IMG/VR virus record: IMGVR_UViG_3300022839_000006
Span: 124,001 to 188,000 of that record
Strand: one strand, 5' to 3'
DNA: 64,000 bases
Shown here: one piece after another, positions 27,768-36,117 of the stretch
How the letters are laid out: each line of letters starts with the position of its first letter
Numbering within the stretch: position 1 is the stretch's first letter
Translations under genes and position numbers: made by a program
Notes under the pieces: generated by a model
The model's input: only the letters and a program-made list of their open reading frames with translations
Told to the model about the DNA's origin: nothing
Database searches by the model: none

Positions 27768-29480
27768 TTATTTTGTATACTTCAACTTTCCACAATCATA
27801 CACTTTTAAAAACCCGTGATTTAGTGCGTTCTGGTGCTCTGTCAATTCGGGACAAAAAGTGTCAGGATACTTTGCTTGGAGTTTGGCTCTTGTCATTTGC
27901 CTCCGAGGGATTCTCCTCTTTGTAGCTCTACAGTAGTAAGTGTAATCTGGTTTTGTCTGATGGGTCAGACTCATCCCCGACTTTTGATATATGTTGTTTT
28001 CAAAATCAGTCCACAACAAATCAGCATACGTGTAGACGTTGGTAACCTTTGACATTATTTTTGACAGTCCACCTACAACAGGGAGTTTTGACGCAAATCT
28101 TGTAAGATCGTGACTGTCACCATACCGCTTAAATGTCGCAACAGAAACCAACAGACCCTCATGCTCGAGGCCTATGTTGAAAGAGTGATTGACATTCCCT
28201 TGAATGTGATGATGCTCGAGAAACTCCTTACAATCAACATCATATACTACTTTTGTCTTTCTTGCCCCTATAGATATATCTGATGGCTCCAAAAGAGACA
28301 TGATTTTTCGTCGGATTAGATCTGGACCATCTCTTAGATCATCTTCAAACAGGTGGATCAATCTTATACCATTATGTGCAGCATCTTTCTTTTTGTCTAA
28401 ATGATAATTTGTAGGTTTGAATTTCTCGGAGTGCCAATAACAACCATTTATTTCAAACCCTATGTTATAATCAGGGAGAAAGATGTCAATCTCCTTACGG
28501 TCACTCAACAATGTTCTATCATTGAATATAGGAGAATAATCAGCTAGCCATCTACCAACCATGTGCTCGTAGGATGAAGGCTGTCCAATTCCCTTTCTCA
28601 GAATGTCGAAACTATCAAGCATCTCTGCTACAATAGGGTGGCTGCATCCTAGAAATTCGCCCATTTGCTCGAGTGACATCGTTTTATAAAGTTCCTCCAA
28701 CAGAACTTTGTCGTAAAGACCTTCAATGTTTTCTCTTGGTGTTCCTTTTGTAAACACACCCAGTTTGTGTATTTGTGTGTTGATTATGTGATTCTTGACC
28801 TTATATTTTTTCGCAATCTGTGGTATCGTATATTGCTCTCTTAGTTTACGTAGAGTATCAGCACTCTGTATGTCTATATGAATCTCTACATGTGTGTTTC
28901 TTTTTGTGTCTTCTCCAGACTGTTTAATAATATCTGATGCTGTCTGAACACTACAGCCAATTTCTTTTGAACATTGTGTGACATTAGAACCGCTATGCCA
29001 TTGTTTTAATATCTGTGTTTTCACACTCTCTACATCGAACTTAAACTTGTCAAACTTTTTGTACTTTTTGGCCCACTTGGTTACAGTAGAGGGTGCATGT
29101 CCTGTAATTGCTGATATTCCAACAATTGTCTCGCACGAATCGAATAGGATAGGATCGAAGGGGATTGATTTAATCACAACAATCTTGCTAATTCTCACAA
29201 ATCTTCGAACAGAATCTACTGGAACCTCTAACCTGTCTGCAATGACTCTGCAATTGATATTTCCGCTAATATAATCATCCTGAAACTCACAGAACCTACG
29301 CGCGACAATATCATAGAACGTCTCCCTCAATACTACGCCCCAACGATCTGCAAGTTCCTGCACCGACGAAGACGATACGCCGTACGTATTTGCAATGGAA
29401 GAGAAGCTCTCTCCCGAATCGATTAGATCCTGAAAAGAGCTTCTATTAAGAACAGACGTAAGTGTTCCTCTTTTAGACAC
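27768..29480 (-). mobile_element. Hef-like (Vsr/DUF559-type) free-standing homing endonuclease with HTH repeats
   Basis: SSYE...EIDIFLPDYNIGFEINGCYWHS...GIRLIHLFEDD; multiple N-terminal HTH-like repeats; GTG start overlaps the folE stop. Confidence 0.75.
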
Positions 29481-30187
29481 TATGCGCGATTACCTGCAAA
29501 CTGCTGCTGCATTTTCACATTGTCAAAGAACTCTTGCTTGACACTTTGGTTGAAGAATTGTCCCCTAAGTTCTGTTGTTTGAGTCAAAGAGCTGTTTGCC
29601 ATCACTCCTCGTGTGGAACAACATCCGTGTGTAGCTTGGATGTAGACAGCAACATCACGCGTTTCTGTCGCCTTGCTGATCTCGTTAGCAATGTCCATCG
29701 TCAACTGCTCTTGGAGTGTTCCACGACGTGCTGCATGTTGAGCAATTCGAATGTACTTCGAGAGCCCGATCACACTTGATGATGGCAAAACTCCGATATA
29801 TGCGACACCTTGAACGTCCTTGTGGTGGTGACTACACATTGAGTGGATCTCTGCACGTACAACAATCATTCCGCTATACCGTGTATCAGGATCAGTGTTT
29901 GGGAATGAAGTTACAGGTGGAGGTGGCGTGTAGCGACCTCGCATCGTTTCGTTGATGTACATCTTTGCAAGACGCTTTGCTGTTCCCATTGAGTTTGGAT
30001 CTGTATTGCGATCGATAATTAGAGAGTCGAGTACACCTTCAAACTTAATTGCCAATTCATCGATCAGCATATCCGTTTCGCCCTCTTCAATGAATGGCGA
30101 TATGTTGTCATTTGCCCAGAAACGGCTATTACTGTCTTGTATCCGCGCACGTATTGTCTCGGAGATTGTTTTGTTTTCTTTCGTCAT
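29480..30187 (-). CDS. folE: GTP cyclohydrolase I
   Basis: SMCSHH, IGLSKY.R, R..LQE.LT, HGC...RGV; start MTKENK. Confidence 0.95.
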   Translation of the reverse strand: MTKENKTISETIRARIQDSNSRFWANDNISPFIEEGETDMLIDELAIKFEGVLDSLIIDRNTDPNSMGTAKRLAKMYINETMRGRYTPPPPVTSFPNTDPDTRYSGMIVVRAEIHSMCSHHHKDVQGVAYIGVLPSSSVIGLSKYIRIAQHAARRGTLQEQLTMDIANEISKATETRDVAVYIQATHGCCSTRGVMANSSLTQTTELRGQFFNQSVKQEFFDNVKMQQQFAGNRA

Positions 30188-30285
30188 GTTTGTAGTGCCT
30201 TTCAGATTGTGTTTTATGTCAGTGGAAAGGAGCGAGGACTGACACACTCGGCCAACAGAAAACCTTACGGTGCAACCTGTTGGAA
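30188..30285 (-). promoter_or_regulatory. Candidate riboswitch (SD-occluding pseudoknot) in the folE leader
   Basis: Hairpin CCAACAG/CUGUUGG, then stem UGUCAGU/ACUGACA whose loop CCUUUC is complementary to the SD GAAAGG. Confidence 0.5.
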
Positions 30286-30299
30286 AGTCTTGTTGCTTT

Positions 30300-30740
30300 C
30301 TATTGTTGTTCCCAGGGAAATGTGACCCAGGGCGCATCGGCTGGGATCAACATGGCTGTCACATCACTGTTGAATATGCTATCTACTTTTGTAACAAGTG
30401 ATGCGTATACGACGTTGTCTGTGCCGCCATACACATTGTTTATTGAGTTAAAAGTATGACCAGTATCATTGATGTCGTCAACAAATACAACTCTTTTACC
30501 TGATTTTATACCTTCTTTGAGTTCAGAGTTGTGCTCACACTTCTGAACATCGCGTGTTTGCCACACAATAGTTTGGAGCGGCAACTCAAGATGGTGTGAT
30601 AGGTAAAGAGCAGGAAGAAGCCCCCCTCTTGTAATTCCTACAATAATGTCAGGACTATGTGTTTCGACGTGCGTCCTGAGGTGTTTACACATGAGATCAA
30701 TATCATTGTAGCTGATATGCATTTTAGCGACTGTGCTCAT
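30300..30740 (-). CDS. Type I purine phosphoribosyltransferase (Gpt-like)
   Basis: GITRGGL, PRPP-binding VFVDDINDTGHT, W..FPWE. Confidence 0.9.
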   Translation of the reverse strand: MSTVAKMHISYNDIDLMCKHLRTHVETHSPDIIVGITRGGLLPALYLSHHLELPLQTIVWQTRDVQKCEHNSELKEGIKSGKRVVFVDDINDTGHTFNSINNVYGGTDNVVYASLVTKVDSIFNSDVTAMLIPADAPWVTFPWEQQ

Positions 30741-30897
30741 TTACGTGCTCCTATTGTAGGCGGAATGAACGACAGATCTGCTTCATTCAATCAGATCTGT
30801 CGTTTGTATGTTAGGTTACGATTTGGTTTTCAAATCGATACACGTGAACTCTTGCAGCTACGTTGGGTGTGGGCACAAGAGGCTCACCACCTTGATG

Positions 30898-31782
30898 TTA
30901 CGCTAAACTGGCATAGAGGTGAATCTGAAGATTGAGAACGTAACCGTGTTCGATGCAGTATTGTGCTGCATATTCATGATTACGTTGATTTGCATCCATA
31001 TCCAACAATCCAGGTTCCCAGAAGCTAATTACCTCATCGACTGTAGATCTTTCTCCGATCTCAATTCTATTTGCTCCACTGTTCCGCAACTCCTTACTCT
31101 TTATTGGCTCGTCGTTGTATACGTTCATTGGACTGATGTAGATTGGCTTGTTTGTCTTTTCGTGCCATTCTTGTGCCCACTCTGGAATTGAGCTGTATGG
31201 GCTGTCCGGATCCGCTTCCATCACGAACTTCAAACAATCCGCATCGATCATGTTGTCTTTGTGTGGTTTGATGTACTTGCCCATCATTCCACCCTTCTCG
31301 ATGCACTTTGGACTCATAACCAAAACCGTTGTTTTCGGAATACTCGATTGATGAACGATCCCATTGGATTCGATTTGAGTATTCTTAAATACCTTATTCA
31401 TCCGTTCCAACAGCGGTCCAATATTCTTCTGTAAGAGGGGTTCACCACCCGTCATTACAAGAACCACTTGCTTTTTAATTCCCGTCAACGGATCATGCAA
31501 AGTCCAATCAGGACGATTCATCCCCTTGTCTGAATAGAATTTGTCTATTGCTGTTTCGATGTTCGCATCGACCTCGTCGAACGTCATCCAATCGCCATCA
31601 TCAAAGAATGTGTCACAAAAACTACAAGCCAGATTACATTTTGCTAATCTAATAAAGAAAGCTGGTTCGCCCCGGAATGGCCCTTCCCCTTGTAAGGTCA
31701 TGAACATCGAAGTGACGAACAACTTGTCTTCTTCTGCGTCCTTAAAATATTTTTGTCCTACTATTTCGTTTTTTCCAAACAT
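30898..31782 (-). CDS. queE: 7-carboxy-7-deazaguanine synthase (radical SAM)
   Basis: TLQGEG...FIRL..CNLACSFCDT, TGGEPLLQ, IESNG, SPK, LQ.H. Confidence 0.93.
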   Translation of the reverse strand: MFGKNEIVGQKYFKDAEEDKLFVTSMFMTLQGEGPFRGEPAFFIRLAKCNLACSFCDTFFDDGDWMTFDEVDANIETAIDKFYSDKGMNRPDWTLHDPLTGIKKQVVLVMTGGEPLLQKNIGPLLERMNKVFKNTQIESNGIVHQSSIPKTTVLVMSPKCIEKGGMMGKYIKPHKDNMIDADCLKFVMEADPDSPYSSIPEWAQEWHEKTNKPIYISPMNVYNDEPIKSKELRNSGANRIEIGERSTVDEVISFWEPGLLDMDANQRNHEYAAQYCIEHGYVLNLQIHLYASLA

Positions 31783-31846
31783 TACATGTCCTTATTTCTT
31801 GAGTGTTGAAATTTCATTGATCAGTTGAAACTGTGTGTCGTTCACT

Positions 31847-32491
31847 TTACGGTGTGCCACAAGAGCATTCATGATCTCCTTGCTCGATTTTTGTTAGATG
31901 TGACCAGGATCCAAGACGCTCAATCGCATCGATTGGCGCTTCCCAATCCCATCGTGATTTGATAGGAAGAGTTTCGTGACCGCCATCAATCTTACTATTT
32001 GCATCAGCAAAGGCTGTTTGTTTATCTACTTCGCACATTGCATCGTTGCGGTTGTGCTCATATACACGTACACGTTCTACATAACAGCGTCCGTCCGTTA
32101 CCTTATACACGTAATGGTTGACGTGCTCCCAGATAAACAGCGAGCTCATTTCCATAGATACACCACTTGGCAATACACGCAACGTGCCAAGTATGCCACC
32201 AGGCGCTGTCAGTTCGGACGTGATTTGTCCAAGTCTCGGATCGTCAGCAGGAAGTACTGTGACGTGATCGAAGTAATATTCGAGGAAGTGTTTCACAGGA
32301 CCGAGTTCACCAAACGGAACAATCCATCCATGTGGATCAATCTCTCCTGCAAATGTAAACTCAACTTCACGATCGTATCCGTGAACGCTTGCACAATCAC
32401 CTGGCGTGCCGTCAGGATTCTTGTCAAAATGTTGTGCATGGCCACACGGAAGGTACTTGAACACCTTCGTTGCCTTAATTTGTATTGCCAT
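31847..32491 (-). CDS. queD: 6-carboxytetrahydropterin synthase
   Basis: CGHAQ...CASVHGY, FDH, S.E, V.E...N motifs of the QueD/PTPS family; adjacent to queE. Confidence 0.85.
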   Translation of the reverse strand: MAIQIKATKVFKYLPCGHAQHFDKNPDGTPGDCASVHGYDREVEFTFAGEIDPHGWIVPFGELGPVKHFLEYYFDHVTVLPADDPRLGQITSELTAPGGILGTLRVLPSGVSMEMSSLFIWEHVNHYVYKVTDGRCYVERVRVYEHNRNDAMCEVDKQTAFADANSKIDGGHETLPIKSRWDWEAPIDAIERLGSWSHLTKIEQGDHECSCGTP

Positions 32492-32551
32492 TGTAAATAC
32501 TCCTTTGATTATCGGTCGGAGTGTTTAGAGAGGGTCGATCCGTAGTCCTCT
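32492..32551 (-). promoter_or_regulatory. Candidate preQ1-I-like pseudoknot riboswitch in the queD leader
   Basis: AGAGG-ACUACGGAUCGAC-CCUCU-CUAAACAC-UCCG: 5-bp P1, loop CGGA pairs with 3' UCCG; the same 3' strand can instead pair with the SD. Confidence 0.55.
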
Positions 32552-32559
32552 TGCTTAAT

Positions 32560-33021
32560 CTATTGTACGGCATTTCCATAGTTGACGTCAACAAAATTGT
32601 CGCTTATAGACGTGCCGTAATATCTGTACCAACTAGGTTTAGATCGGATTCGCTCGACGACTCTTGCTACATTCACAGCGAGATCTACACTGTTGGGGAC
32701 CCAATCTTGCCACAGACCCTCAGCTCGTTGAAACACTGTCCAATCTATCACCCTTTCTTCTGGTTTCATGTTATAACCACGCATACGCAACTCAGCGATT
32801 AGGCTATGGTACCTGTTTAAGAGATACAGGCCCTTGTCGTAGTGAAAGGTTACGTGTCCCTTATTTAGCGTATAATTCTTAGGGATCCGTCCTTTGACTA
32901 GTCCACTTTTTGAGTCTAATGTGCGTCTCAGAGATGCGTTGACCATAGGCAATTCCCTATATTCAGCCATTGCATGTTGATCTGTGAGTTTCGATGGAGG
33001 AATCACGTTAATTCTAGTCAT
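32560..33021 (-). CDS. denV: Pyrimidine-dimer glycosylase, endonuclease V
   Basis: MTRIN...L.DQH.MAEYRELP and L..GHV.F.YDK. Confidence 0.95.
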   Translation of the reverse strand: MTRINVIPPSKLTDQHAMAEYRELPMVNASLRRTLDSKSGLVKGRIPKNYTLNKGHVTFHYDKGLYLLNRYHSLIAELRMRGYNMKPEERVIDWTVFQRAEGLWQDWVPNSVDLAVNVARVVERIRSKPSWYRYYGTSISDNFVDVNYGNAVQ

Positions 33022-33022
33022 A

Positions 33023-33208
33023 TTAGCAATTCCAAAGGTAAGTAGTGTCTGTCTCTGGATTGTCTAGGATGTCTTCTGACATTCCAACGATCATTTCCGC
33101 TTCTTCTTCTACGTCGCCTTCAAGCTGTACAGTGTTGATGTAATGCTCCATCGCTTTTTTGATAATTTCAAGTTGGTCAGAGTTCATCTCAATGCTAATT
33201 TTACTCAT
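33023..33208 (-). CDS. Small acidic hypothetical protein
   Basis: GAGGA SD then MSKISIEMN. Confidence 0.55.
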   Translation of the reverse strand: MSKISIEMNSDQLEIIKKAMEHYINTVQLEGDVEEEAEMIVGMSEDILDNPETDTTYLWNC

Positions 33209-33263: not shown

Positions 33264-34976
33264 TCAAGCGAAAAAGTCTTCCAACGTGTCAACCTTTGTG
33301 GCAGACCACCCCAATGAGTCGAGAATGTTTTGAATTGGATCTAGGAACACTTTTGAGAACTGCTTCTCTCTGTCAACGTAATTGTCTATTTCCATTTCAG
33401 CAGGAGGACTCTCAATGAACGATATTATATTTTCGCGAAGAGGATTCGGCAGCTTCAAGTACACGAACTTGATTTTGTCTCCTGACTGTATAAGAGGATA
33501 ACGATTGACGAGGTCATTGTCTACAGTCCACTTGTTTGATAGAAGACAACCACGGATGTGAATTGGACAGGCCTTTTTGTATATCGTCCTTGGATCAGCA
33601 TAGCCATCCACGTCGTTGGTCCCAGAGACCTTAGCTATGTGTTGAACAGACAAACCAAAAAACTCCTCCTTGAAGTCTCTTATAAATTCCTGTGTCTCAG
33701 ACTCGCCTTGCGTAACAATGATCTTAAACGCTTCAAAAAACTTCTTTCTACATATTTCTGGTGTAGAGCTTCTTGCCGCATCAATTCCCGTGACAGACAC
33801 CTTTGGCTCATCATAGTGAACACCCTCACTATTAAGAACATTTAATATGTATCGCTTCTTTGCAACAAAGATGGCCTTGTCTGCAATCTTTTCACGTTTC
33901 ATTTTCATTGCATTACGATATGCACCCATTCTTTCAGCTAAATCATCATACGCATCGTCAAGCAACGGCTCAATCTTTTCTTTGCACACTTTGTCAATAA
34001 AAGACTCGCCTTGCTCGCGCGTAACATTGACGGTTCCAAACACCTTTTCGACGAGTGGACCAAGATTGACATACACACTGTCTGTGTCGCAATACACACA
34101 ATAATCAACATCTGTCGTTTTGAGCACTTTGTTTACGTACATGTTAATTGCCTGTGCGGCCCACTTGGTGGAAAGCTGTCCTGACGTTGTAATGCCCTCA
34201 GCCATGTCACTAATGTAGTAGATAAAAAATGCGTTGGCTGTACTTCCATAAAGTCCGTTCATTAGAATCTTGATGGACATTTGGCTGTTGTGTAGCTGGG
34301 TTATCAGCTTTTTCAACCGTACAATTTCATCCTTCGTTGTTGCTATCTCAAGCTCAGACTCTGCCATGAGCATCTTTACTTTGATCTCTGCACGTTCGTC
34401 GTAGTATCCTTGAATGATCTGAGGAATGATCCCCTCACGTTCTTTAGAGAAGCAAGCTCCATTTGCTGCTACTGCATACTTGGTCGTGTTTTTGTAGTTG
34501 CCGTCTAGTACAATCTGTTGTGACACGTCCTCTTTTACGTTGTGTTGATATGTTTCTGGTGACATGTTGTATTGCATCATTAAGTGCGGATAAAGGCTGT
34601 TAAGGTCAAAGGACACAACCCAATCTTTCATTCCCTTTTGTGGGTCCTTTACATATCCACCAACGATGCCCCTTGCACTTTCCTCTGATGCAGATTTGAT
34701 GAATGGTACGCGTCCTTGATCCATTAGGGCTCTGAATATAGTGGTATCCCACAGTCCCACAGTTCCAAACGCCTCGTTAAAATTGACACCACTCTTGTAT
34801 GCAACAGTAAACGACAGTGCAAGAAGAGCTACTTGCTCTTCAAACATCTCAACAAGCCTCGTGTCATACAAGTTGTAATCCAATCCAAGCTGATAATATT
34901 CACGATCGGCAAGGTCGGAATACTTGCGATGCATTTCAAGCAACTGCTTGTCCGTTAGGTCCTTCATATCTTCCAT
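33264..34976 (-). CDS. gp43: Family B DNA polymerase gp43, C-terminal subunit (ExoIII + polymerase)
   Basis: YNLYD (ExoIII), DLNSLYP, K..MNGLYG, YCDTDS, KKRY, clamp-binding tail LEDFF; own GGAGA SD. Confidence 0.93.
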   Translation of the reverse strand: MEDMKDLTDKQLLEMHRKYSDLADREYYQLGLDYNLYDTRLVEMFEEQVALLALSFTVAYKSGVNFNEAFGTVGLWDTTIFRALMDQGRVPFIKSASEESARGIVGGYVKDPQKGMKDWVVSFDLNSLYPHLMMQYNMSPETYQHNVKEDVSQQIVLDGNYKNTTKYAVAANGACFSKEREGIIPQIIQGYYDERAEIKVKMLMAESELEIATTKDEIVRLKKLITQLHNSQMSIKILMNGLYGSTANAFFIYYISDMAEGITTSGQLSTKWAAQAINMYVNKVLKTTDVDYCVYCDTDSVYVNLGPLVEKVFGTVNVTREQGESFIDKVCKEKIEPLLDDAYDDLAERMGAYRNAMKMKREKIADKAIFVAKKRYILNVLNSEGVHYDEPKVSVTGIDAARSSTPEICRKKFFEAFKIIVTQGESETQEFIRDFKEEFFGLSVQHIAKVSGTNDVDGYADPRTIYKKACPIHIRGCLLSNKWTVDNDLVNRYPLIQSGDKIKFVYLKLPNPLRENIISFIESPPAEMEIDNYVDREKQFSKVFLDPIQNILDSLGWSATKVDTLEDFFA

Positions 34977-35070: not shown

Positions 35071-36117
35071 CTAGACAGAAAGTCCTCTACGCTGGATTTC
35101 TTCCAGCAAAACGTCCCTTCGTTTTACACACATTTCTCCATGTGTCAGTACATCATCGGGAAGGTCGCGCGATATTTTTACGTCCTTGGCTCCATCAGAA
35201 ATGAATCGGTGAGTATCAACTTTGTTTCCGTGCGCCTCATAAGAAAGCTTCTTTGTGCCAAGTACAATCGTAGCGACGTTATCAAGCTTGTATGACTGCA
35301 TCGTGCCGTACTTGTATCCGAACTTCTTAAATGCATTCATGTAATCGACAATGCTGATACCGCTAATTACGTATGTTTTTTGCATCTTATTGAACATCTC
35401 GAACGACCGTTCGCGAACATGTCCCCACGGCGAAAGTCGTTTGACAGCAGCCATTCCAAGTATGTTTTCAATTCTCTTTACAATATACGTGATGTCAAAC
35501 AGCTCGACGTTCCACCCCGTGACAACATCTGGATAGTCACTACACCACAAATCGACAAACCTGTTCAGCATGTCATACTCTGATTGACACTTGTGGTACT
35601 TGATCAATGAGGGATCAATTCCTGTTATAGTCTTTTCTGGATCGTAGTCTTTTGTACCAAACATGTAGTAATTAGACGATTTAGACGATTTAATTGCGAC
35701 AGACGTAATCTCGTTGTCTGCAGTCTCCATGTCAGGCTTCTTCTTGCTGATATCTACCTCGATGTCAAAGGTAAAGATGTTAATCAGCGAAGGATCAAAA
35801 TCAATGGTACCAGGATACATGTCATATGTGAAAGACGCGACGTAATTGGTATTCCCACACATGACCATGTTCTGAACGTCTTTGTACCTCTCCACAAATT
35901 CTGTTGCACGCTTCATGTCATCACACTGGATCGACTTCAATGGCCTGTCACCTATTAACGACACGTGCGATGGCTTTTGGTCCTCATTCTGACGATCCTC
36001 TACGTAGAATGTAGGCTGATACTTGACCTTCTTGTAGAACCGTTTGCCGTTGTCATATCCTGTCCATAGGATATCATTTCCATAACGTTCGATCTTTGTG
36101 TACATCGTGTTGTTCAT
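35071..36117 (-). CDS. gp43: DNA polymerase gp43, N-terminal subunit (NTD + ExoI/II)
   Basis: FDIEV (ExoI), TGWNVELFDITY (ExoII), SYKLD.VA...LG..KL.Y, then a ~50-aa non-polymerase tail. Confidence 0.92.
   Translation of the reverse strand: MNNTMYTKIERYGNDILWTGYDNGKRFYKKVKYQPTFYVEDRQNEDQKPSHVSLIGDRPLKSIQCDDMKRATEFVERYKDVQNMVMCGNTNYVASFTYDMYPGTIDFDPSLINIFTFDIEVDISKKKPDMETADNEITSVAIKSSKSSNYYMFGTKDYDPEKTITGIDPSLIKYHKCQSEYDMLNRFVDLWCSDYPDVVTGWNVELFDITYIVKRIENILGMAAVKRLSPWGHVRERSFEMFNKMQKTYVISGISIVDYMNAFKKFGYKYGTMQSYKLDNVATIVLGTKKLSYEAHGNKVDTHRFISDGAKDVKISRDLPDDVLTHGEMCVKRRDVLLEEIQRRGLSV

What the first reader, a model, noticed from the sequence alone, without database searches (positions are those of the whole stretch)
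32492..32551. preQ1-I-like aptamer variant upstream of phage queD, apparently wired as an ON switch
Seen (minus strand): AGAGG ACUACGGAUCGAC CCUCU CUAAACAC UCCG. P1 (AGAGG/CCUCU), the AC just before the 3' strand (the position of the ligand-pairing C) and the A-rich tail match the B. subtilis queC preQ1-I aptamer as I recall it (AGAGGUUCUAGCUACACCCUCUAUAAAAAACUAA). The loop 5' side differs (ACU versus UUC) and P2 is CGGA/UCCG. The strand AAACACUCC can instead pair with GGAGUAUUU, covering the SD, so pseudoknot formation would free the RBS. Inference: a phage riboswitch with altered ligand specificity controlling supply of the modified base; with the folE leader it would form an RNA-level circuit for genome modification.
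Basis: partly seen in the sequence, partly recalled or inferred. Interest (0 to 1): 0.88.

Follow-up and report, generated by a model that had tools for sequence, protein, structure and literature searches.

The report
Phage queD-leader pseudoknot riboswitch candidate
The 68-base leader in front of this phage's queD gene is a divergent copy of a small RNA pseudoknot found at the same place in at least 243 uncultured phages; it resembles a preQ1-I riboswitch but is wired to switch translation on, and I found no published or Rfam description of it.

Summary
On its own the fold is no better than chance (z = -0.78). Comparison with other phages makes it real.

- **Family size:** 243 non-identical phage or metagenome leaders carry the same H-type pseudoknot directly upstream of a QueD/PTPS gene.
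- **Transcript position:** it usually sits 6-9 nt after a sigma70-type -10 box.
- **Covariation:** both helices covary (88.9% of cells paired, against 51% or less when partners are slid; 0 of 500 shuffles reach the covariation score).
- **Window membership:** a covariance model built without the window's clade finds window 32507-32553(-) as the top hit in 64 kb (23.2 bits, E about 0.002).
- **P2 register:** P2 is UCG/CGA plus CGG/CCG, L2 is only AC (C32534), and L3 is 10 nt.
- **Wiring:** in about 90% of leaders the 3' half of the aptamer pairs with the SD/AUG in the MFE. Pseudoknot formation should therefore free the ribosome site, which is ON logic.
- **Known families:** Rfam 15 gives no hit, preQ1-I included. 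No bacterial isolate genome or cultured phage carries the motif.

The ligand is unknown. My best guess is a 7-deazaguanine, or another compound with a guanine-like face. This looks like an undescribed phage riboswitch class.

The parts
32562..32591 (-). sigma70-type promoter TTGACG-18 nt-TACAAT, overlapping the end of the denV-like gene. The predicted transcript start is a few nt before P1.
   Evidence: 10/12 match, the best in 29300-33100. In the family, 130/232 leaders have a promoter match of 9/12 or better within 50 nt of P1, against 10/232 in control windows; the -10 box mostly ends 6-9 nt before P1.
32547..32551 (-). P1 5' strand, AGAGG.
   Evidence: In the family the middle pair is AU/CG/UA with no mispairs, and the two inner G-C pairs are invariant.
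32543..32546 (-). L1, ACUA. The C and U are invariant in the family.
   Evidence: L1 is N-C-U in 179/179 parsed aptamers.
32536..32542 (-). P2 5' strand, CGG-A-UCG. CGG is the outer part, A32539 is bulged, and UCG is next to the junction.
   Evidence: Family register; duplex energy.
32534..32535 (-). L2, AC. C32534 is the near-invariant C directly 5' of the P1 3' strand, the position of the preQ1-I specificity base.
   Evidence: L2 is NC in 178/179. PMC11625349 describes the role of this C in preQ1-I.
32529..32533 (-). P1 3' strand, CCUCU.
32519..32528 (-). L3, CUAAACACUC. It fits the family consensus N-U-A-N-A-N-A-Y-U-C at the fixed length of 10.
   Evidence: length is 10 in 178/179, and A3, A5, A7, U9 and C10 are invariant.
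32513..32518 (-). P2 3' strand, CGA-CCG. A32516 stands where the family has a near-invariant C opposite U.
   Evidence: U/C juxtaposition in 176/179; the window clade has U-A or U-G.
32518..32527 (-). Anti-SD stretch, UAAACACUCC. It overlaps L3 and the first P2 3' base.
   Evidence: MFE; -8.7 kcal/mol duplex.
32494..32503 (-). SD region, GGAGUAUUUA (GGAG at 32503-32500), which pairs with the anti-SD stretch.
31847..32491 (-). queD-like PTPS gene (214 aa), the regulated gene.
   Evidence: PF01242; TIGR03367, weak. In the family, 239 of 243 first downstream genes fall in one PTPS cluster.
29480..31782 (-). Downstream genes on the same strand: QueE-like radical SAM (30898-31782), xanthine/guanine-type PRTase (30300-30740), and FolE (ORF 29480-30337, likely start 30186).
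   Evidence: No QueC or DpdA homologue was found in the 64 kb.

Best explanation
Window 32553-32489 (minus strand) is the 5' leader of an early queD-queE-PRTase-folE transcript. It carries a translational RNA switch of a phage-specific family.

The aptamer is an H-type pseudoknot:
- P1 of 5 bp, closed by G-C;
- L1 of N-C-U plus a linker;
- P2 of about 8 bp with one internal irregularity;
- a 2-nt L2 ending in a conserved C;
- a 10-nt L3 with invariant A3, A5, A7 and UC.

Without the effector, L3 and the P2 3' strand pair with the SD/start-codon region and block initiation. When the pseudoknot is stabilised, that strand is taken up and the ribosome site is freed, so QueD is made (ON switch). 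The most likely stabiliser is a small planar ligand stacked between P1 and P2 and read by C32534, as in preQ1-I.

Shown:
- the family, both helices and their covariation;
- the conserved loop bases;
- the position at the 5' end of the transcript;
- the exclusive link to queD;
- the alternative pairing with the RBS.

Inferred:
- that a small molecule binds;
- the ON direction in vivo;
- the pocket location.

Ligand guesses, in order: a 7-deazaguanine (preQ0, preQ1, CDG or 7-deazaguanine), a pterin such as dihydroneopterin (tri)phosphate, then guanine or GTP.
For: - That makes 243 non-identical leaders, 239 directly upstream of one PTPS/QueD cluster.
- **Covariation, alignment A1:** 88.9% of cells are paired, against 51% or less with slid partners. 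The covariation score is 0.462 against 0.138 in shuffles (0/500 reach it).
- **Covariation, 179 parsed aptamers:** the P1 middle pair is AU 71 / CG 59 / UA 49 with no mispairs. The P2 pair next to L2 is AU 111 / GC 68 with no mispairs. The first three P2b pairs are 93-94% paired, with many pair types.
- **Window membership:** the leave-clade-out model R2 finds the window site at 23.2 bits, E = 0.0023, with the next hit at E = 0.34. It finds L004 at 22.3 bits.
- **Promoter:** a sigma70-type promoter lies directly upstream.
- **Alternative pairing:** the P2 3' strand or L3 pairs with the RBS in 87-92% of leaders, against 31-36% for shuffled controls. RBS unpaired probability is 0.44-0.52 in a free fold and 0.63-0.72 with the aptamer blocked.
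- **Window energetics:** the anti-SD duplex is -8.7 kcal/mol against -5.9 for P2. The default state is therefore OFF.
- **Resemblance to preQ1-I:** the features listed in PMC11625349 are present, namely the G-C closing pair, a C preceded by U/A/C before the P1 3' strand, and a conserved C in L1.
Against: - No ligand, binding or expression data exist; all evidence is comparative and thermodynamic.
- ON control of the first committed biosynthetic gene by a pathway product would be unusual. All known preQ1 riboswitches are OFF switches (my own knowledge; the review read describes only SD-sequestering mechanisms and never uses the term 'ON switch').
- The window clade departs from the family. It has A or G instead of the near-invariant C opposite U in P2, a bulged A, and a shorter L1. 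It could be a weakened or re-tuned copy.
- Pseudoknot energies cannot be computed with the tools used.
- No RNA-seq run was listed, so the transcript start is not confirmed.
Confidence: 0.6

Rival explanations
1. The pseudoknot is a protein-binding operator. A phage protein, for example QueD itself or another early protein, binds it to activate or repress translation, as gp32 does at the pseudoknot in the T4 gene 32 leader.
For: - The phages are T4-like in gene content: split PolB, Rad50/SbcC-like and denV genes.
- The motif occurs only in phage or phage-like contigs.
- Conserved loop bases could equally be protein contacts.
- The T4 gene 32 precedent rests on my own knowledge.
Against: - The compact size, the fixed L2/L3 lengths and the invariant junction bases match small-molecule pockets of the preQ1-I type.
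- The switch is coupled to an alternative RBS pairing, which needs no protein.
- Downstream gene content varies widely, so no common partner protein other than QueD is evident.
Confidence: 0.17
2. It is a ligand-independent RNA element. The conserved 5' pseudoknot sets mRNA stability or a fixed, slow-folding level or timing of QueD translation, without sensing anything.
For: The structure sits at the extreme 5' end of the transcript, where structures protect mRNA. No ligand is known.
Against: - More than ten unpaired positions are invariant across 179 or more sequences, which is more than stability requires.
- The competing RBS pairing is maintained through very different sequences in the sub-groups.
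Confidence: 0.13
3. It is a bona fide but very divergent preQ1-I riboswitch that binds preQ1 and represses (OFF).
For: - It has H-type pseudoknot topology, the conserved C before the P1 3' strand and the G-C closing pair, and it is linked to queD.
Against: - The Rfam PreQ1 model gives no match at E<=10 for the window or for 12 typical members.
- L1 is NCU rather than U/UU.
- The SD is not inside P2 or the tail. It lies 10-30 nt downstream and pairs with the aptamer's 3' half, which gives ON, not OFF.
Confidence: 0.07
4. It is a small self-cleaving ribozyme or other processing site of a new class.
For: Small pseudoknotted ribozymes are common in phage metagenomes (my own knowledge).
Against: - No match to any Rfam ribozyme family.
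- It has a strict position between promoter and RBS of one gene family, with an RBS-coupled alternative pairing.
Confidence: 0.03

Closest known systems
preQ1-I riboswitch (Rfam RF00522; types I-III)
   Same: - Small H-type pseudoknot with a 5-bp P1 closed by a conserved G-C.
- A conserved C preceded by U/A directly before the P1 3' strand.
- An A-containing L3 able to line the P1 minor groove.
- A conserved C in L1.
- Association with 7-deazaguanine (que) genes (PMC11625349).
   Different: - No hit to the Rfam model.
- L1 is N-C-U, not U/UU.
- L3 is exactly 10 nt, with alternating invariant A and a terminal UC.
- P2 is about 8 bp with a conserved U/C juxtaposition, instead of 2-4 bp.
- The SD is outside the aptamer and the wiring is ON.
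- It is found only in phage contigs.
Translational ON riboswitches (adenine add riboswitch, guanidine-II/III); my own knowledge
   Same: The ligand-stabilised aptamer competes with a helix that sequesters the SD or start codon.
   Different: The fold and conserved bases differ. Those sense adenine or guanidine and control salvage or efflux genes, not a first biosynthetic step.
T4 gene 32 mRNA leader pseudoknot; my own knowledge
   Same: An H-type pseudoknot at the 5' end of a T4-like phage mRNA that controls translation.
   Different: That element is a nucleation site for a protein, and its RBS is covered by cooperative protein binding. Here the RNA itself offers an alternative pairing with the RBS.
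THF-II (folE motif) and other riboswitches for compounds with a guanine-like face
   Same: They control pterin or GTP-derived pathways through recognition of a 2-amino-4-oxo-pyrimidine face (my own knowledge).
   Different: No Rfam match. THF-II is a hairpin with an internal loop, not a pseudoknot, and is an OFF switch.

Membership tests
preQ1-I riboswitch (RF00522) | Scores against the curated Rfam covariance model | tested here: not met
   There was no match at the gathering threshold. There was none at E<=10 on window 32400-32650, nor on 12 typical family loci.
preQ1-I riboswitch (RF00522) | H-type pseudoknot with a 5-bp P1 closed by a conserved G-C pair | tested here: met
   P1 and P2 cross and both covary. 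The two inner P1 pairs are G-C in 179/179.
preQ1-I riboswitch (RF00522) | Specificity cytosine preceded by U or A immediately 5' of the P1 3' strand | tested here: met
   L2 is UC 82, AC 61, CC 35, CU 1. The window has AC at 32535-32534. Its role in ligand pairing is not testable here.
preQ1-I riboswitch (RF00522) | U or UU atop the P1 5' strand (L1) | tested here: not met
   L1 is N-C-U, with N = A 107, U 37, C 35. The window has ACU.
preQ1-I riboswitch (RF00522) | SD buried in P2 or the 3' tail, so that ligand binding represses (OFF) | tested here: not met
   The SD lies downstream of the aptamer and pairs with L3 or the P2 3' strand in the alternative fold.
preQ1-I riboswitch (RF00522) | Binds preQ1 | not testable with these tools
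   No binding assay is available. Complex prediction refuses RNA plus ligand without a protein.
queD-leader pseudoknot family defined here (alignments A1/A2) | Detected by a covariance model built without the window's own clade | tested here: met
   R2 finds window 32507-32553(-) at 23.2 bits, E = 0.0023, the top hit of 64 kb on both strands. The next hit is at E = 0.34.
queD-leader pseudoknot family defined here (alignments A1/A2) | Invariant loop bases: L1 C-U, L2 final C, and a 10-nt L3 of N-U-A-N-A-N-A-Y-U-C | tested here: met
   The window has ACU, AC and CUAAACACUC.
queD-leader pseudoknot family defined here (alignments A1/A2) | C-G plus R-Y pairs next to L2, where R-Y covaries as A-U or G-C | tested here: met
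   The window has C32537-G32517 and G32536-C32518, the G-C allele. That allele is shared with 101 of 243 leaders.
queD-leader pseudoknot family defined here (alignments A1/A2) | Conserved U opposite C inside P2 | tested here: not met
   The juxtaposition is U/C in 176/179. The window and L003 have U-A, and L004 has U-G.
queD-leader pseudoknot family defined here (alignments A1/A2) | Located between a sigma70-type promoter and the RBS of a QueD/PTPS gene, with the aptamer's 3' half complementary to the RBS | tested here: met
   promoter; gene; anti-SD pairing.
Riboswitch (general) | Direct, selective binding of a metabolite that changes expression | not testable with these tools
   This needs in-line probing, ITC and reporter assays.

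The most novel reading that the evidence does not exclude
This would be a virus-only riboswitch class that reuses a preQ1-I-like pocket but is wired in reverse. A 7-deazaguanine or pterin made during infection would turn ON translation of the phage's own QueD, giving RNA-level control of DNA hypermodification. The window clade (A instead of the invariant C in P2) and the rare C-to-U variant at the specificity position (L013-L015) could be natural specificity variants.
Probability: 0.45. Interest if true: 0.9.

Novelty: new variant of a known kind. Interest (0 to 1): 0.8.

Why it matters
Riboswitches are rare in phages, and the ones reported are copies of bacterial classes; for example the glutamine riboswitch, with PMC9004378 calling them a rare feature.

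- **What would be new:** this would be a class found only in viruses so far. It is abundant in marine, freshwater and salt-lake viromes. It controls entry into the 7-deazaguanine pathway that phages use to protect their DNA from restriction (PMC6884629, PMC10516641).
- **Structural interest:** it would be the first ON-type relative of the smallest known riboswitch fold. That gives structural biologists a natural test of how a preQ1-I-like pocket can be re-tuned.
- **Experimental handle:** it gives phage biologists a way to study how and when genome modification is switched on.
- **Practical use:** a 50-nt ON switch is also an attractive part for engineering.

Tried and rejected
- **Rfam:** scans at the gathering threshold and at E<=10 on the window, on 12 family loci and on the folE leader gave nothing relevant.
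- **Cultured phages:**
  - megablast and blastn of the region and of two family leaders found nothing;
  - the nearest QueD homologues (RHph_I1_18, ACP17, X1) have no intergenic leader.
- **Failed pattern scan:** one viral scan was wasted on a mistyped pattern. The corrected pattern found only the five known window-clade contigs.
- **Bacterial and archaeal genomes:** the scan gave 53 pattern matches, of which only 7 look real. All 7 are on short MAG contigs, which are probably phage DNA.
- **RNA-seq:** none was listed for this DNA.
- **Complex prediction:** it refuses RNA plus ligand without a protein.
- **Literature:** nine full-text searches found no description of the motif.
- **Rejected readings:**
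  - a second copy of the motif elsewhere in the window;
  - a coding explanation, because variation is compensatory rather than codon-like, and the only ORFs across the site are antisense.

Full report
**1. What is in the window**

On the minus strand a denV-like gene (32560-33021) ends with TAG at 32562-32560. A 68-nt spacer follows, then a 214-aa PTPS/QueD-like gene (31847-32491). Downstream on the same strand are a QueE-like radical-SAM gene, a xanthine/guanine-type phosphoribosyltransferase and FolE.

No QueC or DpdA homologue is detectable in the 64 kb. The window is part of a 208-kb IMG/VR contig and its DNA is held by salt-lake metagenome runs. The gene content is T4-like.

- P1 is AGAGG/CCUCU.
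- AC precedes the P1 3' strand.
- An A-rich stretch follows.
- A 9-bp pairing of UAAACACUCC with GGAGUAUUUA covers the SD, and it is part of the MFE fold.

The fold alone is not better than chance (z = -0.78).

**2. The element belongs to a large family**

Fetching 52 relatives of the QueD protein from viral contigs showed that about 40 carry a similar leader, with obviously compensatory P1 variants.

- **Metagenome scan.** It gave about 95 further distinct true members, many from TARA ocean samples.
- **Linked gene.** Together these give 243 non-identical leaders. In 239 of them the first downstream gene falls in one PTPS/QueD cluster.
- **Later genes.** These vary: glycosyltransferase-like proteins, UvdE, QueE, PRTase, FolE and others. 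The constant partner is queD.
- **Cellular genomes.** In 185,579 species genomes only 7 real-looking copies were found, all on short MAG contigs.
- **Cultured phages.** None matched. The closest cultured QueD homologues have no leader.

**3. Structure**

On alignment A1 (136 distinct sequences, 55 columns) the structure is P1 (columns 3-7 with 27-31) crossed by P2 (columns 16-21 with 45-50, plus 23-24 with 42-43). Of all cells, 88.9% form standard pairs, against 30-51% when partners are slid by 1-3 columns. The covariation score is 0.462 against 0.138 in shuffles (0/500 reach it).

A register-based count on 179 parsed aptamers gives the following.

| Element | Count |
|---|---|
| P1 middle pair | AU 71, CG 59, UA 49, no mispairs |
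| P2 pair next to L2 | AU 111, GC 68, no mispairs |
| First three outer P2 pairs | 93-94% paired, with 6 or more pair types |
| U opposite C inside P2 | 176/179 |
| L1 | N-C-U, C and U invariant |
| L2 | N-C |
| L3 | exactly 10 nt, N-U-A-N-A-N-A-Y-U-C |

This is an H-type pseudoknot. Its invariant unpaired bases all converge on the P1/P2 junction.

**4. The window's copy**

A covariance model built from 132 members, excluding the window clade, finds 32507-32553(-) as the best hit in the whole window (23.2 bits, E about 0.002; the next hit is at E = 0.34). It also finds L004. No second copy exists in the window.

In the family register, the window's structure is:
- P2 is G32536-C32518, C32537-G32517, U32538-A32516, A32539 bulged, then G32540-C32515, G32541-C32514, C32542-G32513.
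- L2 is A32535-C32534.
- L3 is 32528-32519.

However, it breaks the family's fixed loop lengths, and it is weaker in L004.

The window clade differs from the consensus in three ways. It has A or G where the family has the near-invariant C opposite U, it has a bulge, and its L1 is shorter.

**5. Position in the transcript**

A TTGACG-18-TACAAT site ends at 32562. Across the family, 130/232 leaders have a sigma70 match of 9/12 or better within 50 nt upstream of P1 (50 are perfect), against 10/232 in control windows. The -10 box usually ends 6-9 nt before P1. The aptamer is therefore the very 5' end of an early mRNA. No RNA-seq run was listed to confirm this.

**6. Expression platform**

The sequences after the aptamer differ between sub-groups. 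In each, the P2 3' strand (or L3 in the window's group) is complementary to the SD or start codon. Three examples come:
- CCUAUG with CAUAGG;
- GCCAUUG with CAAUGGC;
- AAGUCAUC with GAUGACUU, which reaches into the first codons.

| Measure | A-U allele (n=142) | G-C allele (n=101) | Shuffled control |
|---|---|---|---|
| Leaders whose MFE shows the aptamer-RBS pairing | 89% (3 or more pairs, P2 3' strand) | 92% (4 or more pairs, L3 plus P2 3' strand) | 31% (A-U test); 36% (G-C test) |
| Mean RBS unpaired probability, free fold | 0.44 | 0.52 | 0.55 |
| Mean RBS unpaired probability, aptamer blocked | 0.63 | 0.72 | not computed |

In the window the anti-SD duplex (-8.7 kcal/mol) is stronger than P2 alone. 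The default state should therefore be OFF, and a stabilised pseudoknot should give ON.

**7. Comparison with known families**

Rfam 15 gives no match to the window or to typical members at E<=10. The architecture nevertheless parallels preQ1-I as summarised in PMC11625349:
- a G-C floor pair;
- a cytosine preceded by U/A just before the P1 3' strand;
- a loop-1 cytosine that in T. tengcongensis forms a triple with the ceiling pair;
- an L3 that lines the P1 minor groove.

It differs in L1 (NCU), in L3 (10 nt, ending UC), in its long P2 with the U/C juxtaposition, and in the position of the SD with the resulting ON logic. It works like a preQ1-I-type pocket but is not a member of that family by the tests I could run.

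Nine literature searches found no description of it. The library is incomplete, so prior publication cannot be excluded.

**8. Ligand**

Nothing here identifies the ligand.
- The conserved C and the gene link favour a molecule with a guanine-like face.
- The pathway encoded here (FolE, QueD, QueE, PRTase, with no QueC or DpdA nearby) points to CDG or 7-deazaguanine chemistry rather than preQ1. PMC10516641 describes phages that make dDG or dCDG.
- ON logic would fit either substrate induction (dihydroneopterin triphosphate, GTP) or a product-driven positive loop.

The main rival is a protein-binding operator, in the manner of T4 gene 32.

**9. Verdict**

The interpretation (preQ1-I-like, ON-wired, phage riboswitch) is largely borne out as a hypothesis by strong comparative evidence. 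Membership of preQ1-I fails, and the ligand, the 'altered specificity' and the link with the folE leader remain untested.

Noticed in passing
window 30187-30299 (minus strand), between the PRTase stop and the likely folE ATG at 30186: A second conserved structured leader. It has two hairpins; the first shows compensatory changes across the window, L003, L004 and L314. The second has a highly conserved 15-nt loop (CCUCGCUCCUUUCCA). It has no Rfam match at E<=10 and is not related to the queD motif.
   Followed up: partly
L013, L014, L015 (about 2935-2985): These three contigs carry U instead of the near-invariant C directly before the P1 3' strand (L2 = CU). This could be a natural specificity variant or a defect.
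   Followed up: no
window 32516 (also L003, L004): The window clade replaces the family's near-invariant C opposite U in P2 with A (or G in L004). This turns a conserved U/C juxtaposition into a pair, and it comes together with a bulged A32539.
   Followed up: partly
family-wide (alignment A1 columns 24/42; loci L234-L353): The P2 pair next to L2 exists as two abundant alleles with no intermediates: A-U in 142 leaders and G-C in 101. The G-C allele is common in marine (TARA) contigs.
   Followed up: yes
window 33264-34976 and 35071-36117 (minus strand): The family-B DNA polymerase is split into separate ORFs, an exonuclease part and a polymerase part, about 95 nt apart.
   Followed up: no
window 27768-29480 (minus strand): A 570-aa HTH/HNH homing-endonuclease-like gene (phrog_3339) abuts the end of folE (29480).
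   Followed up: no
window 30300-30740 (minus strand): A xanthine/guanine-type phosphoribosyltransferase sits inside the QueD-QueE-FolE cluster, and no QueC or DpdA is present in the 64 kb. This suggests a nucleotide-level route for a 7-deazaguanine base, as in toyocamycin-type pathways. PRTase also recurs in other motif-bearing loci.
   Followed up: partly
L012:3585-4319, L068:6587-7417 and relatives: In about half of the family the gene after queD is a Pfam-less protein of about 250-280 aa that matches only PHROG 'glycosyltransferase' families. It is often followed by UvdE. Its link to 7-deazaguanine chemistry is unknown.
   Followed up: partly
L188, L197, L199, L214, L219, L223, L229: MAG bins labelled Bacteroidetes, Rickettsiales, Crocinitomicaceae, Nitrospira and Chitinophagales contain short contigs with the phage motif plus queD. 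These are probably phage contigs binned with bacteria.
   Followed up: partly
window 31847-32491: The window's QueD is 214 aa, with a C-terminal extension compared with the 157-195 aa of the relatives.
   Followed up: no
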